A stretch of DNA of 64,000 nucleotides from Vitrella brassicaformis CCMP3155 (lineage: Eukaryota > Protista > Chromerida): positions 186,001 through 250,000 of the forward strand of contig CDMY01000759.1 of assembly GCA_001179505.1 (NCBI GenBank). Direction: 5' to 3'. Position numbers and translations under genes: made by a program. Positions 5,401-11,500 of the stretch are shown here, one piece after another (the first letter of the stretch is position 1; every line of letters starts with the position of its first letter). The notes beneath the pieces are model-generated. The model did not search any database, had not been told where the DNA came from, and was given only the letters and a program-made list of their open reading frames with translations.

Positions 5401-6744
5401 GCCCTCGCCGCCACGCACAAACGGGGGAACTGCACATCAAACACAACACACAGAGAGGTCGCGTGGGTGTGGTGTGGGTGCTGTCTGTGTGGCGTGTCTG
5501 GTGGCCATTTACTTGTGCCTTGGTGGTACCCAAAATGGCAGATGGCGTAGGGGTCGTGGATCTACGTAGTAACACACAATGGTCAACATGACTGAGTGCG
5601 TAACTGCGCGCAGGTGTGTCGTACGGTGATCCACGTGTTGACGGAGGGCAGGCCCGTGTACATGACCTCGGCAAAGGCCGCGAAGTCGTCCACAGTCGAC
5701 TTCACGCGCCAGTCCTTACCCCTAAACAACACACCACACCACACCACACCACACCACACACGCGCACACATGCATAGACACATCCGTATCTCTGTGCGCA
5801 CCCAACACGCCTCAAGCATACTGTGGCATGTCCCAGTGGTAGAGTGTGGCGATCGGCTCCATGCCGTTGGCCTTTATGGCCTTCACCAACCGCTGATAGT
5901 ACGAAACACCTGCACACAGGCGGCACAGGCGCCACATACGGGTGTGTGAGGCCATCGATCCATCCATCCACACCTTTGTGGTTGGGCTTGTTGTCTTTGG
6001 TCATGACTCGGGACCAGCTGATGGAGAAGCTGACGGATGGCGACAACGATACCACAATCAATGGGACACAGAGAGCGTGTGGTGCCTGCCCATTGGCACG
6101 TGTGTGTTGCCCTTTTCTCCTTCTCACTGGAAAGCGTCGAAAGCCATATCTTTAGCCTTGGCGATGTCCTGCTCGAACTTGTCGTGGAAGCCAGCGCCTT
6201 CACTCTGGCACACACGCCACACACACACACAGACGAGCAAACACCATCCACACCCCATGTGTGTGACGCTGACGCTACCCACGCCCACCGCACCGGTTTC
6301 CTGCCCGCCTTCTTGTCGGCCGCGTCCCACACGCTGTCGTGACGGCCATCACCAGACGAATGACCCTCCACCTGCAGAAGAAACACACACAATCACACAC
6401 AATCACACAATCACACAACACACAAAGTGCAAAACGCCCCGCCTGCCCCGACACACACACAACGACCCCCAGCGGTGCACCTGGAAAGCGACTGTGGAGG
6501 TGCCAAAGAGGAATTTCCGGCCCTCCTTCTTGCCCTTTTCCACGGCAGCGGTCAGTGCAGCCAGGAGGTTCTCCTCCGGCGGCAGGGCCTTGTCGTACTT
6601 GTGCCAGGGTTTGTTGACGAGGCCCTTGAGCGCCTCGTCGACGTGGCACTGGTGCGAAATCGCCGCTGGCCGGAAAGAAAGGGCGGCCAAAGGCGAGGAG
6701 GCCAGCAGGAGGAAAGGGAAACCAAAGGTCAGTTGGGGCTGCAT
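422..6744 (-). CDS. Secreted tandem glycoside hydrolase family 1 protein (two GH1 domains; first degenerate with PAN/Apple insert, second catalytically intact); multi-exon, one exon region lost in gap 619-918
   Basis: N-terminal hydrophobic leader from ATG 6744. Domain 1: [40 protein letters not shown]. The linker [10 protein letters not shown]...LLATAVQK splices in frame to domain 2: [38 protein letters not shown] (2177-2185), IIITENG (1040-1048), RFGLQYVDF, stop at 422. GT-AG introns restore the frame. Confidence 0.9.
619..918. other. Assembly gap (300 N)
   Basis: N run with poly-G on the right flank. Confidence 1.
4545..4960 (-). other. PAN/Apple-like domain inserted in GH1 domain 1
   Basis: Spliced exons give [13 protein letters not shown]...[29 protein letters not shown]...NNCYLK...MSGAAEC, the C-x3-C-x5-C-xx-FTY...CYLK pattern of PAN/Apple modules. 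Confidence 0.72.
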
Positions 6745-6824
6745 TGCTGATCAAAAAAGTGCCTGCGTACTATTGTTTCGTACCTCCGAGCTCTCTCTAT
6801 TCCTGCTTTGATTTTCCCTTTTAG

Positions 6825-8032
6825 GCGCACGTCTTTCCCGCCCTACTCCTTCAGCGGCCGCGTGTCGATTTCCGGCATCGACGACCGCCCCCTGACGCGC
6901 ATCAACTTCCCGGGTGGTTCTCTCGCTGATGTGCCCTTCCTCATCCCGACCCAAGGCAGCCAGCGCTCAGTCATGACACAAGACACCCTGCAGCGCAGCG
7001 GCCTTCAAGACCACTTCCATCCCTTCAGCGAGAGGGATGTTGTGATGCTGCTGGATGACAACAATCGCCCCATCACGCCTCTCGGTGCTGTCACGTTCCT
7101 CGCGTCAGCCAGTGCTCGAGCAGAAGATCGCCATCCCGTCACCTTCTTCGTGGTGCCGGGCTCACTGCTCAATGTCATTGGCGACGACTCCCTCAAAGCT
7201 GTGTCTGGCGGCGACCTCGTGGTGGTGGGACCAGACGGCGCTACAGGCGATGGGCAGTATTGCTTCCACGCCTTCTCCCCGCTGCCGGTCGTTGAGGCGT
7301 ATGCCGCGTGCTCGAAAGCAAGCTGGGGCGTCTACGTGGAGGGCTTTGTGCAGGACAGGTACCTGAGCGGGCTGGCAGCACAGCACACCTCATGTACCGA
7401 CCTCTCCTTTTGATTCATTTGCAGCGGTGTGGTGGATGGAGGCCAGACGAGCAACCGCGCCTCGCTGTGCGCCATCGTGAAGGCAATCAAGCACTGCTGG
7501 TACTGGTACGCCACACGCGCACAGACGCAATACGTCGCAGCCATATTGCTCGTCCTTCGTCTGGTGCGATTGTTGCGTTGCAGCGACGATGAGCGTCTGA
7601 GTTGCCGCCCTGCGGTGATCCACTCCTGCTCGGAGTACGCTGTTAGGTGTGCCGTCGAGTGGCTGCATAAGTGGCACACCGGATGGAGGAAGAGCGACAA
7701 GAAGGTGACATCACAGCTGCCACGGGGTGTTCCGGCTGGAGCCGTCATCATGGCAGCTTGTCTGTGTGTGTGGTGCCTTTGATTGCAGCCCGTGAAGAAT
7801 CGGGATCTCATCGAGGAGATCGATGAGCTGATACAGGTACACACACAGAATGCTCTTCCATCGACGTACATGACGCCGGACATACGGATGCCTTCCTCGA
7901 TCCTAGGTGAGGCAGGGGCAAATGGAGCCTGCCGCGCTGCAGTTTGTCCACGTGCGCGACGACGGCCCAGGAACCTCGCGGGCGAGGGGACTTGCACATG
8001 CTGTGCAGGGGGCTCCACATAGAAACACCTGA
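6825..8032 (+). CDS. Retropepsin-like domain fused to RNase HI-like domain, both apparently catalytically dead; start codon unresolved
   Basis: Exon 1: FLIPTQGSQRSVM...ITPLGAVTF...VTFFVVP...NVIGDDSL (retropepsin/DDI1-RVP-like layout). Later exons: GQTSNRASLCAIVKAI, VIHSCSEYAVRCAVEWLHKWHTGWRKSDKK|PVKNRDLIEEIDELIQ, LQFVHVRDDGPGTSRARGLAH, TGA 8030-8032, closely paralleling RNase HI (TNNRMEL, STDSQY, WKTADKKPVKNVDL). Canonical introns, e.g. 7359-7424. Confidence 0.68.
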
Positions 8033-8582
8033 CCGAATGTAATGTGGATGGCTTTTTGCTCCTTTGTTTCCATATTTGCCGTGGCCGGCCGGCCGGTGGC
8101 TGCTATAAATGTGAATGAGGCGATCGATGGGATCATGCAAATCGGTGCCGTCTACGTACTTACGTGTGCATGGATATGTGCATGGATAGATGGATGGAAG
8201 CCGCCGGCCATGCAGTGCGTGCCAGTGTACGCTCGAGATGAGGGTGGGCGTACATATATATACCGTTCGTTGTATACACTTTCTTCGGGTGAATGGATGG
8301 TTGGTTGGTTTACGCTCAGGACTGTGACGGTGAGACACTCTAAATGTTCATGCAACACTCAGAGTGTCTGCACACACACACACACATCTATCTCCAGCCA
8401 CCAACACAATGAACCTGCTGCTTAGATTTCGCCTCGGCGTGTGCCAAAAAGGAAATCAGCCATCAGTTATTCATCTTTCGATCAATCCATTCACCGTCAG
8501 TGTCATCAGCCACGCGCACACACGCAATGGACCGCCCATGTGTGTCTCTTTCTCTCTGGCTGTCTGTGTCTGTCTGTGTGCC

Positions 8583-11500
8583 TCATGGGTCATCGCTGTC
8601 TGGTATTGGCTGTGCGATTCGTTGGATGGTGAGTGCCATGAGTGTGGTGTGGCTGCGGGCACACACACTCTCGCGCGACGCGCCGCTCGCCATGCACTCT
8701 GCCGTCACCGATATGCTCTTGTCGTCCACTGTCACCTCACCACTCGCCTGCACACACACAACAGCCGCACATATGTGTCGTCCATCCATCCATCCATCCA
8801 TGTGTTGTGATGTGATGTGGGTGGGTGGGCCACCCAGTAGATTTGTCCTGCGGCCAACTTCTTGTGCTTGACAAACGACACGCCGTTCACCTGCACACAC
8901 ACACAAACACACACACACACACACATCGACAGGCTGCCCATGGTGCCGTCCTCACTGACTCAATGAATAAATGACTCACCTGGAGGTCGAATGACTGTTT
9001 GGTGGTGCCCTCCTTGTGTGTGTGTTGCGGTGCCAAAGTGGCGCACGGGCTGCCGATCTGGGCCTGCACGAGGTATCGTCCGGTCGGCAGCCCGGCCACG
9101 GTCCAGCTGTTGGGCGTGCAGTCGACTCGCTGCTCGCGGCACTCCTGCGTCTCGGGGGCCGGCGGGAAGGAAATTCCATAACTGTTGAGGGGGTCGGTCG
9201 CCGCTGCCGACTTGTGGGGGCAGTGCACGATGTTTCTGTGGGCGTCTCTTGTCCAGCCGAAGACTGGCGTGCCGACTTCAGCTTTGGTGGACCGCTCCTG
9301 GCCGTTGTCAGCGATGAAGCCGGCGGGAGTGGGGACGCCGCTGGGCTGGAACGAGAAGGCGAAGCTGATGGCGCCCTTTTGCTGTGCCGTCTTGATACAC
9401 GCGCGCCCCGGCACCCGACTGCCGCACGGCAGCACACACGAGGGGGCGGCACTCGGCCACTCGTACTTGAGCACCGCACCACTCTGACACACTCACACAA
9501 TGAATGACACACAGACGATGAGGTGAGGCGTCTCTTTCTCTGTGTGTGTGTGTTGATCGACCTGAGTGAGTTTGACGAGGATTTCCTTTTGCTGGTTGGG
9601 CAGCGTCGACACGGCGGCGATCTCTGCGGCCGCCCAGGTGCCGTTGGCCACTCTGACGTCTACCTGCATGCCTGCGGCGGGCTGGAAGGAGGGCGGCGGC
9701 GTGAGCGATTGAAAGGCCAGTGCATAGCCCGACGGGCCGCGAAGCGACGACACCCCGCGACGCGAGACGCCCTTGCTGAAGCCCTTTGGCTGCGGGCCGA
9801 CAATCGTCACGTAGAAGTCGCAGTGGCCACTCGAAGACGTCACGCCACACGCACCGCTGCAGTCAGTTAAGCAAAGACAGACAGACAAGAGAGAGGTGCG
9901 TGTGTGTCTGTGTGGTGTCTGTGTGTGTGTGTGGTGGGTTTAGGTGGTTGGGTGTGGTGACTTACCTGTGGATGGCGGCCTTGCAGAGGTTTGACTCGGC
10001 TGCGTACAGTCCGTCGCCGTACACCGATCCCTTGCGGGCGGCCAGACACTCGCTGACGGGCGGACAGGAGAAGGCGTACACCGACCCTTCCTCGACCGGG
10101 TGGACCTGACAATCAGTCACACATCACATCAAGTAGGTCAAGACACACACTCATCCATCGAATCGGTCAATCTATGTGGCTGTGTCTCCCTCTGTGTTAA
10201 TCGTTTGTGTGTGTGGCGTGGCGTGGCGTGCCTCGGGGATCTTCTCGAGTGTGGTTGTGCAGTCGATGTGATGGACGTGTGTGGGTGCGTTGCCACTGGC
10301 GGCCGTCTCGGGTGAGCATGGTGTGCCGATGAAGTCGAAGCTGCCGCCCGTGAACTGCCCGTGGCCGCTCATCGCCGTCACCGTCGCCGTCACGCGACGC
10401 GTCACGATCGGCCGCGGCAGTCGATAGTCGCGCACCGAGTTGCTCGAACGAATCGAAAACACCTGAAAGTCAAGACATAAGTAAGGAGAGTGTGTGATGT
10501 GACTGTCCATCAGTGTGTGTGTGCGTGTGCCTGTCCGGTCTCGTCGGGTTCGTCGGTGGTGGTGAGGCGGATCTCCGACGGACGGTTGACAAACGAGTCC
10601 AGCGGCTTGAACTAAGACACACACACAGAGAGAGCAATGGACTGACGTGTGTGTCTGTGTTTGGTGGCTCACTTTGAATTCGTTGATTTGCACGGGTTTG
10701 GAGAATTTGACAGTGATGCTCTCGTACACGCCGCCCGCGCCGACACTCGACCGCCACACGCCCAGCGGCCCGTCCGTGTGACGGCCACTCAGACCTGACA
10801 CACACACAGATGGATGGATGTGTGTGTGTGTGTGTGTCTGTTTGTGTCTGTGTGTGGCTGGCTGACCGTATTGGAAGCTGAAGTCGTCCCCGGCCTGCGA
10901 TGACGCCTCGCAGCCGGCGTAGGTGTCGCTGTTTGGCCGCGAGAGGACGACCGTCTCGCCCCCGCAGGCCTCCTCGCCCTTCGGCTGCGGCTGGTCGAAC
11001 AACAGCACGAAGGGCCGCGAGTGCGTCACGGCGAGGCCGACGTCGCCGGCCGGCGAATCCACATAGTGCACGCCCAAGATGCGCGAGCCGACGGCCCTGT
11101 CCGCCTCAGTGCGCCTGGGGCCCCTCGAGAGCAGGTGCAGGAGGTCGTCGGTCGCGTGGAAGTGCAGAGGCCGCTCCTCGCATGACGCCACGGGCAATGA
11201 CTCACCCTGAACCAATTCACATGGACGGATGGATGGATGTGTGTGGATGTGTGTGTGTGTACCGTTTGTGAGAGGACGAACAGCTTGGCGGGCATGTTGG
11301 TGGTCATTGTGAGTTTGGTGCCGACGGCCGGCGTGGCGTTGGTTCGGAGCATTCGCATGTTGACGTACTTGAGAGGCAAGTCCGCCAGCACTGTGGTGCT
11401 GTCGGCCATGAAGGCGGCCTCCCCGTTGGCGGCGTACCCGAGTTGCCACGTGGAGGGGTCGAAGCCGCTGAGCTTGAGGGCCGGGGGCGGGTTGGTCTTG

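What the first reader, a model, noticed from the sequence alone, without database searches (positions are those of the whole stretch)
6825..8032. Intron-containing gene fusing a dead retropepsin-like domain to a dead RNase HI: possible domesticated retroelement
Seen: the protease-like half has LIPTQG where retropepsins have LxDTG (catalytic Asp absent). The RNase H half keeps the fold motifs (W-rich basic protrusion, KSDKKPVKNRDL, FVHV), but all four acidic catalytic positions appear replaced: TDG to AYA, RxEL to RASL, TDS to SCS, final AD to AR. There is no RT, integrase or LTR nearby, and three canonical introns preserve the frame. Established: protease and RNase H co-occur in LTR-retrotransposon pol, separated by RT. 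Inference: a host gene co-opted from a retroelement (or from DDI1-RVP plus cellular RNase H1) that may bind RNA:DNA hybrids and dimerise without cutting. It could act as an R-loop reader or a dominant-negative restriction factor against retroelements.
Basis: partly seen in the sequence, partly recalled or inferred. Interest (0 to 1): 0.75.

Follow-up and report, generated by a model that had tools for sequence, protein, structure and literature searches.

The report
Dead RNase H1 paralogue in Vitrella
This is a real, transcribed and spliced gene of the alga Vitrella brassicaformis: an old duplicate of a host RNase H1 gene that has lost every catalytic residue but kept its RNA:DNA-binding surface, and it is not a captured retroelement.

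Summary
The gene is real. It is database protein P0001 (253 aa, Vitrella brassicaformis, unnamed), single-copy and spliced in transcript assemblies of three runs. It has four GT-AG introns, not three.

The C-terminal half is a true RNase H (Pfam 42.8 bits against a 25.8 cut-off). All catalytic positions are replaced: D10 to Y/A, E48 to S, D70 to C, D134 to R, and no His124. The basic protrusion and phosphate-binding residues are nearly identical to E. coli RNase HI.

The N-terminal half has no profile, PDB or database relative. It is homologous to the N-domain of a paralogue, P0010. The ESM Atlas model of that domain has only retropepsin-like structural neighbours, and its RNase H is intact. 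Both copies lack the catalytic Asp.

The LIPTQG motif lies upstream of the only in-frame ATG (6973). TTG (6808) sits about where P0010 has its ATG.

All four introns match P0010 in position and phase, and match the canonical RNase H1 gene. The RNase H half is therefore a duplicated host gene, not retroelement pol.

Most likely it is a non-cutting hybrid binder (inferred). Expressed decay is not excluded. An earlier first-reader note (s1-218465) probably describes the paralogue.

The parts
6783..6972 (+). 5' part of the mRNA. It is the annotated leader, but it is in frame with the CDS, open from 6751 and has no ATG. It encodes the first third of the retropepsin-like domain if translated.
   Evidence: Transcript contigs begin at 6783-6797 and are colinear with the genome. 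The frame is open with no ATG. In-frame GC3 is 0.82 against 0.57 at codon positions 1 and 2, Fisher p 0.003. The region aligns to coding exon 1 of P0010.
6808..6810 (+). In-frame TTG, 12 codons before the conserved 'PYS'. P0010 has its ATG 11 codons before the same motif. This is either a lost start codon or a near-cognate start.
6929..6976 (+). Out-of-frame 15-codon upstream ORF. It starts at the first ATG of the mRNA, and its TGA overlaps the main ATG (ATGA).
   Evidence: Read from the sequence.
6841..7287 (+). Retropepsin-like N-domain, homologous to P0010 residues ~10-163. The pseudo-active-site motif LIPTQG lies at 6940-6957, with Pro where retropepsins have Asp.
   Evidence: Smith-Waterman against P0010: first half 47 versus 24.5+-4.6 (6 of 5000 shuffles reach it); second half 51 versus 26.3+-5.0 (5 of 5000). 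P0010's Atlas model has 10 of 10 listed structural neighbours retropepsin-like, TM 0.57-0.66. ESM features of this domain itself point to the same clan at 0.92. hhalign against this genome's retropepsins gives P 0.003 in the expected register.
6973..7358 (+). Coding exon 1 as annotated. The ATG at 6973 has G at -3.
7359..7424 (+). Intron 1: 66 nt, GT-AG, phase 2.
   Evidence: Spliced out in runs X1, X6 and X7. Same position and phase as in P0010.
7425..7505 (+). Exon 2. It carries 'TSNRASL', the E48-equivalent Ser at 7462-7464. An alternative donor lies at 7499.
7506..7583 (+). Intron 2: 78 nt, phase 2. A second donor lies 6 nt upstream within the tandem TGGTAC TGGTAC.
   Evidence: The position is shared with L003 and L004.
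7584..7704 (+). Exon 3. It carries 'HSCSEY', the D70-equivalent Cys at 7627-7629, and the Trp-rich basic protrusion from 7660.
7705..7788 (+). Intron 3: 84 nt, phase 0.
   Evidence: Shared with L003 and L004.
7789..7836 (+). Exon 4 (PVKNRDLIEEIDELIQ), the end of the basic protrusion.
7837..7906 (+). Intron 4: 70 nt, phase 0.
   Evidence: Shared with L003 and L004.
7907..8032 (+). Exon 5 with the stop codon. There is no His at the H124 loop (7955-7963). The D134-equivalent Arg lies at 7985-7987.
8033..8354 (+). 3' untranslated region; this is its minimum extent.
   Evidence: The X6 transcript contig reaches 8354.

Best explanation
The locus is a single-copy, transcribed, five-exon host gene of Vitrella brassicaformis (P0001). 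It is an ancient paralogue of the gene for P0010 on contig C366.

Both genes encode a ~150-residue retropepsin-like domain that lacks the catalytic Asp (Ser in P0010, Pro here), followed by a cellular-type RNase H1 domain. P0010 keeps the full D-E-D-H-D active site. This copy has replaced all of it. It has nevertheless kept the Trp-rich basic protrusion, the T-x-N-R phosphate-binding residues and an intact ORF with working splice sites.

The most likely mechanism, which is inferred and not shown, is a pseudo-RNase H that binds RNA:DNA hybrids without cutting them. It would mark, shield or compete for substrates of the active RNase H1 enzymes.

The ancestral start codon appears to have become TTG. 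The main product therefore probably starts at ATG 6973 and lacks the first third of the N-domain, unless a near-cognate start is used.

The RNase H half arose by duplication of an intron-bearing host gene, not from retroelement pol.
For: Shown:
- Identity with the database protein, and five exons that translate to it.
- Spliced transcript contigs in three runs.
- The N-domain is single-copy in the genome.
- Pfam RNase_H scores 42.8 bits. E. coli RNase HI is the best PDB match, with a near-identical 'GW.K.DKKPVKN.DL'.
- The catalytic columns are all non-acidic.
- P0010 has the same architecture with an intact active site.
- The N-domains are homologous in two independent halves, each p~0.001 by shuffling.
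- P0010's Atlas model has a retropepsin-like fold.
- The four introns have the same phases (2, 2, 0, 0) and aligned positions in P0001 and P0010. Three were mapped by script in the canonical RNase H1 gene L003. The first was read by eye there and lies within 3 residues.

Inferred:
- In a neutral-drift simulation, the joint chance of changing all five catalytic codons while keeping 253 codons stop-free is below 1e-4 at every divergence tried. This argues that the ORF stayed under selection while the active site was dismantled.
- Engineered catalytic-site mutants of RNase H1 are standard R-loop binders (for example PMC12134985 and PMC9303298, listed).
Against: - No orthologue was found, so purifying selection cannot be measured.
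- The start codon of the full-length form is missing, and the first AUG of the mRNA opens an out-of-frame uORF. This looks like decay.
- Arg at the D134 column and the deletions around β1 may disturb the substrate groove.
- AlphaFold2 could fold neither N-domain (pLDDT 34 and 29). The fold evidence for this protein is therefore indirect.
- No protein-level evidence exists.
Confidence: 0.5

Rival explanations
1. It is an expressed relic: a duplicate of the P0010-type gene that lost activity and its start codon, and is drifting toward pseudogene status. It is still transcribed from a shared divergent promoter and still spliced, but has no function.
For: - All catalytic residues are gone.
- There is TTG about where the paralogue has ATG, and a uORF precedes the remaining ATG.
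- The gene is lineage-specific with no orthologue.
- Its transcript start lies only ~35 nt from that of the strongly expressed GH1 gene, so transcription could be a by-product.
Against: - The ORF is intact over 253 codons, plus 74 open codons upstream.
- Four introns are still spliced precisely.
- In-frame GC3 is 0.73-0.82.
- Substrate-binding residues are selectively retained.
- Neutral drift sufficient to change five of five catalytic codons would almost always create stops.
Confidence: 0.25
2. It is a regulatory partner (a 'prozyme'): the dead copy pairs with the active paralogue P0010 through the retropepsin-like domains, which dimerise in true retropepsins, and tunes its activity or targeting.
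For: - Both have the same two-domain architecture.
- Retropepsin folds are obligate dimers (established knowledge).
- Dead paralogues that activate their enzyme partners are known (PMC5201418 and PMC3663545, listed).
Against: - No interaction evidence exists.
- The ATG-6973 product would lack the N-terminal strands and the psi-loop that build the retropepsin dimer interface.
- Neither N-domain could be folded by AlphaFold2, so no complex prediction was attempted.
Confidence: 0.12
3. One reading: a host gene co-opted from an LTR-retroelement pol, that is protease plus RNase H with the RT deleted.
For: - Both folds occur in pol.
- The genome carries LTR-type proteases with the motif VLVDTGADLSV.
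- ESM and structural neighbours of the N-domains include retroelement proteases.
Against: - The RNase H introns are shared with the canonical host RNase H1 gene.
- The basic protrusion is nearly identical to that of E. coli RNase HI.
- There is a tblastn match to the host paralogues but none to the genome's RNase_H-bearing long ORFs L021 and L022.
- The N-domain scores no better than shuffles against this genome's LTR-protease HMM, rank 191 of 1000.
- There is no RT, IN or LTR trace in the window or around P0010.
- Only the origin of the N-domain stays open.
Confidence: 0.06
4. The N-terminal half is not retropepsin-like at all. It is another beta-rich domain, for example LexA/S24-like, or lineage-specific sequence of no defined fold.
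For: - There is no Pfam hit even at E 10.
- There is no retropepsin in the PDB sequence searches.
- The profile of the domain pair gives a marginal LexA hit, E 0.018, on 'LLNVIGDDSLKAVSGGDLVVV'.
- The AlphaFold2 models are unconfident.
Against: - All ten listed Atlas structural neighbours of P0010 residues 1-160 are clan-AA retropepsin-like, with 117-133 residues aligned at TM 0.57-0.66.
- Feature searches of both domains independently return the same clan.
- hhalign puts P-T-Q-G on D-T-G-A and 'VTFFVVPG' on the penultimate strand.
- The LexA match is local and not significant.
Confidence: 0.1

Closest known systems
P0010, the Vitrella brassicaformis paralogue on contig C366 (324 aa, database name 'ribonuclease H')
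   Same: Same two-domain order. The N-domains are homologous. Both lack the retropepsin Asp. The four RNase H introns share position and phase.
   Different: P0010 keeps D, E, D, H and D of the active site, has an ATG start and has two extra introns in the N-domain. The two proteins are only ~35% identical, with no DNA-level similarity.
Cellular RNase H1 / bacterial RNase HI (Pfam PF00075; E. coli RnhA)
   Same: The profile match is above the curated cut-off. The basic protrusion, T-x-N-R, S-x-Y and the C-terminal L-A motif are conserved. Introns are shared with the host's canonical hybrid-binding-domain RNase H1 gene.
   Different: No catalytic carboxylates or His. There is no hybrid-binding domain (PF01693). 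There is an 11-residue Cys-rich insertion after helix A, and a retropepsin-like N-domain instead.
Engineered catalytically dead RNase H1 (D210N and similar) used as R-loop probes
   Same: An RNase H fold with an intact binding surface and an inactivated metal site. This shows that binding without cutting is feasible.
   Different: Those carry one or two designed substitutions. Here five positions changed naturally, including a positive charge (Arg) in the metal site, and binding is untested.
Retropepsin-like clan AA domains (LTR-retroelement PR; DDI1 RVP; bacterial PF13650/PF13975 proteins)
   Same: A predicted fold match for the paralogue's domain. The motif register is shared: G-G-x ... L-h-[D]-T-G ... 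h-h-G-x-D-x-L.
   Different: No profile-level similarity. The catalytic Asp is replaced in both Vitrella genes. The domain is fused directly to an RNase H.
Connection ('tether') domain of retroviral RT, a degenerate RNase H (my own knowledge of Malik & Eickbush 2001; not checked here)
   Same: A naturally inactivated RNase H fold retained in a nucleic-acid-handling protein.
   Different: That case lies inside a retroviral polyprotein next to a second, active RNase H. This one is a separate host gene derived from cellular RNase H1.
Dead-paralogue regulators such as trypanosomatid AdoMetDC prozyme (PMC5201418)
   Same: A lineage-specific duplicate that lost catalysis while an active sister is retained.
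   Different: No evidence here for a complex with the active sister.

Membership tests
RNase H type 1 (PF00075) | Profile match above the curated cut-off | tested here: met
   42.8 bits against a 25.8 cut-off, E 7.6e-11, residues 116-214 of P0001. PDB RNase HI entries match at E 1e-7.
RNase H type 1 (PF00075) | Catalytic D10-E48-D70-D134 (plus H124), E. coli numbering | tested here: not met
   The columns hold Y/A, S, C and R, with no His in the 124 loop. The residue at D10 and H124 depends on the alignment, but no alignment places an acid or a His there.
RNase H type 1 (PF00075) | Basic protrusion and phosphate-binding residues of cellular/bacterial enzymes | tested here: met
   W182, W186, G189-W190, D-K-K-P-V-K-N, D-L, and T137/N139/R140 are invariant with E. 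coli RnhA.
RNase H type 1 (PF00075) | Cleavage of RNA in RNA:DNA hybrids | not testable with these tools
   Needs a biochemical assay. Predicted absent.
Retropepsin-like, clan AA | Sequence-profile match (PF00077, PF13650, PF13975, PF08284) | tested here: not met
   No Pfam family at E<=10 for exon 1 or for P0010 residues 1-165. Against an HMM of this genome's LTR proteases the domain ranks 191 of 1000 shuffles. hhalign gives only P 0.003, probability 10%.
Retropepsin-like, clan AA | Catalytic D-T/S-G-A | tested here: not met
   P-T-Q-G here and S-T-G-G in P0010, at the aligned position.
Retropepsin-like, clan AA | Retropepsin fold | tested here: inconclusive
   AlphaFold2 gave pLDDT 34 for this domain and 29 for P0010's. 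The Atlas's own model of P0010 residues 1-160 has 10 of 10 listed neighbours retropepsin-like, TM 0.57-0.66. Homology carries this over to our domain.
Retropepsin-like, clan AA | Homodimerisation | not tested
   No complex job was sent, because the monomers do not fold in AlphaFold2.
Domesticated LTR-retroelement gene | Remnants of RT, integrase or LTRs, or affinity of the domains to retroelement copies in the genome | tested here: not met
   No pol similarity in the 64-kb window or around P0010. The only direct repeats are microsatellite-like. The RNase H matches the host paralogues and not L021/L022.
Domesticated LTR-retroelement gene | Intron pattern independent of host homologues | tested here: not met
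   All four introns sit at the positions and phases of the host RNase H1 paralogues.
Pseudoenzyme retained by selection | Active paralogue exists, catalytic residues are lost, and the gene is expressed | tested here: met
   P0010 is active-looking. Spliced transcript contigs occur in X1, X6 and X7.
Pseudoenzyme retained by selection | Purifying selection on the dead copy | tested here: inconclusive
   There is no orthologue for dN/dS. Only an indirect argument from a drift simulation is available.

The most novel reading that the evidence does not exclude
Vitrella has evolved a natural 'dead RNase H1' R-loop reader. It works with, or against, its active sister enzyme. The two may pair through their catalytically silent retropepsin-like domains to give an asymmetric binder/cutter pair. 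The full-length form would be made from a UUG start.
Probability: 0.12. Interest if true: 0.7.

Novelty: new variant of a known kind. Interest (0 to 1): 0.42.

Why it matters
Catalytically dead RNase H1 is a widely used laboratory tool for finding R-loops. A naturally evolved, expressed version that keeps the binding handle while losing the whole metal site would show that cells use the same trick. It would also give a ready-made, evolution-tuned hybrid binder.

The pair P0001/P0010 documents an undescribed architecture: a silent retropepsin-like domain joined directly to a cellular RNase H1. It arose from host genes in a close photosynthetic relative of apicomplexan parasites. This is a caution against reading every protease-plus-RNase H pairing as retroelement-derived.

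If the gene is merely decaying, it is an ordinary lineage-specific relic.

Tried and rejected
- AlphaFold2 on the N-domain alone, and on P0010's N-domain with a two-row alignment, gave pLDDT 34 and 29. Both models are unusable, so no fold search was run on them.
- The full HMMER scan of 1.84 billion representatives with the N-domain found only P0001 itself and a spurious repeat protein, P0002.
- The word search with exon 1 found only P0001.
- The metagenome contig scan with the N-domain pair found nothing.
- BLASTP of exon 1 against the L004 exons was not significant. Homology emerged only with gapped Smith-Waterman and shuffles.
- An HMM of this genome's LTR proteases gave no signal.
- A PDB profile search gave a marginal LexA/S24 hit, E 0.018. 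I rejected it as local and not significant.
- An upstream exon at the 'ttttag' acceptor (6824) is rejected, because transcript contigs run through it.
- C356 carries two further RNase H paralogues, but without the N-domain.
- Literature searches found no description of this architecture or of a natural dead RNase H1 paralogue.
- Complex prediction was not used. I do not claim binding, and the domains do not fold in AlphaFold2.
- No RNase H tree was built. The shared N-domain and shared introns are stronger characters than ~150 divergent residues.

Full report
**Locus and expression.** The window belongs to a 72.7-Mb, 1064-contig assembly. A word search with exon 1 returned a single database protein, P0001 (253 aa, 'unnamed protein product [Vitrella brassicaformis CCMP3155]', UniRef name 'RNase H type-1 domain-containing protein'). 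Five exons translate exactly to P0001: 6973-7358, 7425-7505, 7584-7704, 7789-7836 and 7907-8032.

Assembled contigs of three public runs (X1, X6, X7; at least two studies) carry the spliced form with all four GT-AG introns removed. Those introns are 66, 78, 84 and 70 nt long. A fourth run (X5) carries the unspliced, DNA-like form. The gene is therefore transcribed and correctly spliced. In X1 a second donor 6 nt upstream (7499) is also used. It arises from a tandem TGGTAC TGGTAC.

**RNase H half.**
- P0001 matches Pfam RNase_H at 42.8 bits, above the 25.8 cut-off (E 7.6e-11).
- Its best solved relatives are E. coli RNase HI entries (E 1e-7). Identity is striking across the basic protrusion: W..W..GW.K.DKKPVKN.DL.
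- Aligned with E. coli RnhA (L008), with the paralogue P0010 and with other hits, the catalytic columns hold Y/A for D10, S142 for E48, C171 for D70 and R239 for D134.
- No His is available for H124. The exact residue at D10 and H124 depends on the alignment.
- The residues that contact the substrate in the known enzymes are retained: T-x-N-R, S-x-Y, the three Trp and K-N-x-D-L.

**N-terminal half.**
- Exon 1 has no Pfam family even at E 10.
- It has no meaningful PDB sequence match.
- It has no relative among 1.84 billion representative proteins other than itself. P0002 is a repeat artefact.
- AlphaFold2 without homologues gave pLDDT 34.

The key came from the same genome. An RNase H exon search led to contig C366 (L004). 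Its gene product is P0010 (324 aa). P0010 has a ~160-residue N-domain followed by an RNase H with every catalytic residue intact, and it scores 104 bits against Pfam RNase_H.

Gapped Smith-Waterman alignment with 5000 shuffles shows that our N-half is homologous to P0010's in two non-overlapping pieces:
- PYS...FPGGS...LIPTQG...HFHP against PYS...FSGGS...LVSTGG...HLHP: score 47 against 24.5±4.6, reached by 6 of 5000 shuffles.
- P-x-x-x-VT...VV...GD...GG...PLP: score 51 against 26.3±5.0, reached by 5 of 5000 shuffles.

The ESM Atlas holds a model of P0010. With residues 1-160, all ten listed structural neighbours are retropepsin-like clan-AA families, with TM by query 0.57-0.66 and 117-133 residues aligned. 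Language-model feature searches of both N-domains return the same clan (0.92 and 0.89). hhalign of the domain pair against this genome's own retropepsins gives only P 0.003. It does so in the expected register, placing P-T-Q-G on D-T-G-A.

I conclude that the domain is retropepsin-like and that the catalytic Asp is missing in both paralogues (Pro here, Ser in P0010). This conclusion rests on a predicted model of the paralogue, not of this protein. A marginal LexA/S24 hit (E 0.018) is noted as a weak rival.

**The start-codon problem.**
They begin at 6783-6797.
- The frame is open from 6751, yet it contains no ATG before 6973.
- The LIPTQG motif (6940-6957) therefore lies in what the database model treats as 5' leader.
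- This stretch still looks coding. In-frame GC3 is 0.82 against 0.57 at codon positions 1 and 2 (Fisher p 0.003). It also aligns with coding sequence of P0010.
- P0010's ATG lies 11 codons before the shared PYS. Our gene has TTG (6808) 12 codons before it.
- The first ATG of the mRNA (6929) opens a 15-codon out-of-frame uORF whose stop overlaps ATG 6973.
- Either the ancestral start was lost and the product lacks the first third of the domain, or a near-cognate start is used. The data in hand cannot decide.

**Origin.** Programmatic exon mapping and direct reading of the DNA show the following:
- The four introns of our RNase H domain have phases 2, 2, 0 and 0. They lie at the same aligned positions as four introns of the P0010 gene.
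- Three of them were mapped by script in the canonical RNase H1 gene on C317 (L003). That gene carries the usual hybrid-binding domain and an intact active site. The first was read by eye there and lies within 3 residues.
- By tblastn, P0001 matches these host paralogues and E. coli RnhA. It does not match the RNase_H domains of two long ORFs elsewhere in the genome (L021, L022).
- No retroelement pol similarity exists in the 64-kb window or in 8 kb around the P0010 gene. The only direct repeats nearby are microsatellite-like.
- The upstream neighbour is a divergently transcribed GH1 gene whose transcript end lies ~35 nt away.

The RNase H half is thus a duplicated host gene, and 'domesticated retroelement' is not supported for it. 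The source of the retropepsin-like half remains open: it could be a cellular DDI1-like or bacterial-type domain, or a retroelement protease. The fusion predates the duplication that gave P0001 and P0010. The two have no DNA-level similarity and ~35% protein identity, so the duplication is old.

**Function.** No orthologue was found, so dN/dS is not available. I ran a simple neutral-drift simulation on the CDS. At every level of divergence tried, the probability of keeping 253 codons stop-free, multiplied by the probability that five given codons all change, stays below 1e-4. Indels and splice sites are ignored, which makes this conservative. This argues that the ORF remained under selection while the active site was dismantled. 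It is an inference with simplifying assumptions, including independence and no positive selection.

Three things together support a non-cutting RNA:DNA-hybrid binder as the most likely reading, at about 0.5: the selective retention of the binding handle, continued splicing and expression, and the known ability of catalytic-site mutants of RNase H1 to bind R-loops (papers listed). An expressed relic (0.25) and a regulatory partner of P0010 (0.12) are the main rivals.

**Comparison and novelty.** The protein is already deposited but undescribed. I found no paper on this architecture or on a natural dead RNase H1 paralogue. It is a new variant of known kinds: RNase H1 family, pseudoenzyme. It is not a new kind. 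An earlier first-reader note of this scan (s1-218465) describes what is probably the P0010 gene in the same terms. I reached P0010 independently.

- Exons were searched one by one, by reference.
- The spliced protein was used only as the database entry P0001.
- The N-terminal extension was never joined to the rest of the protein for any search or fold. That joined step was left out.
- The five exons were concatenated only inside local scripts. This was done to check that they translate to P0001 and for the drift simulation.
- Read laying was given 2,701 letters.

Noticed in passing
L029:379-1002 (Logan contig of SRR26076636; protein P0005): This is a 207-aa protein with a hybrid-binding domain (PF01693) plus an RNase H. 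Its catalytic columns are also replaced (IKTTAC, NRAAV, PSCSEY, no G-H, YDLAE). It is a second, independent natural dead RNase H1 in an unidentified organism. Retrieval was biased, because it shares 5-residue words with the query.
   Followed up: partly
window 7494-7511: The tandem TGGTAC TGGTAC gives two donors 6 nt apart for intron 2. Both are used in run X1. The upstream donor sits at the position homologous to the paralogues' intron.
   Followed up: yes
window 6744-6797: The minus-strand GH1 gene (ATG 6744; transcript contigs end at 6747-6749) and this gene (contigs begin at 6783-6797) leave only ~35 nt uncovered. This is an extremely compact divergent promoter.
   Followed up: partly
window 6929-6976: The first ATG of the mRNA opens a 15-codon out-of-frame uORF. 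Its TGA overlaps the annotated start (ATGA), which could allow termination-reinitiation or leaky scanning.
   Followed up: no
P0011 (MMETSP transcript), mapped on L028 and L003: The transcript model is a chimera. Its N-part is identical to P0010 (C366 gene) and its C-part to the C317 RNase H1 gene. The two are joined at the shared QTNQRAELFA stretch, which is probably an assembly artefact between paralogues.
   Followed up: partly
L027 (G000:C356:104000-113999), about 5590-6210 and 7990-8890: There are two further tandem RNase H1 paralogues with active-looking motifs (NQRAEL, FTDSKY). Neither has the retropepsin-like N-domain.
   Followed up: partly
L021:436-2019:+ (G000:C61): This is a 528-aa open frame with a C-terminal RNase_H domain (41.8 bits) and a 355-residue N-part that has no Pfam family.
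   Followed up: no
L010 (G000:C225) and L009 (G000:C246): These are host retropepsin-like genes with introns. One is a PF13650/PF13975 protein (FLVDTGSTQS) and the other a DDI1-like gene (FVDSGAQST). They are possible cellular sources of the N-domain, but no detectable similarity to it was found.
   Followed up: partly
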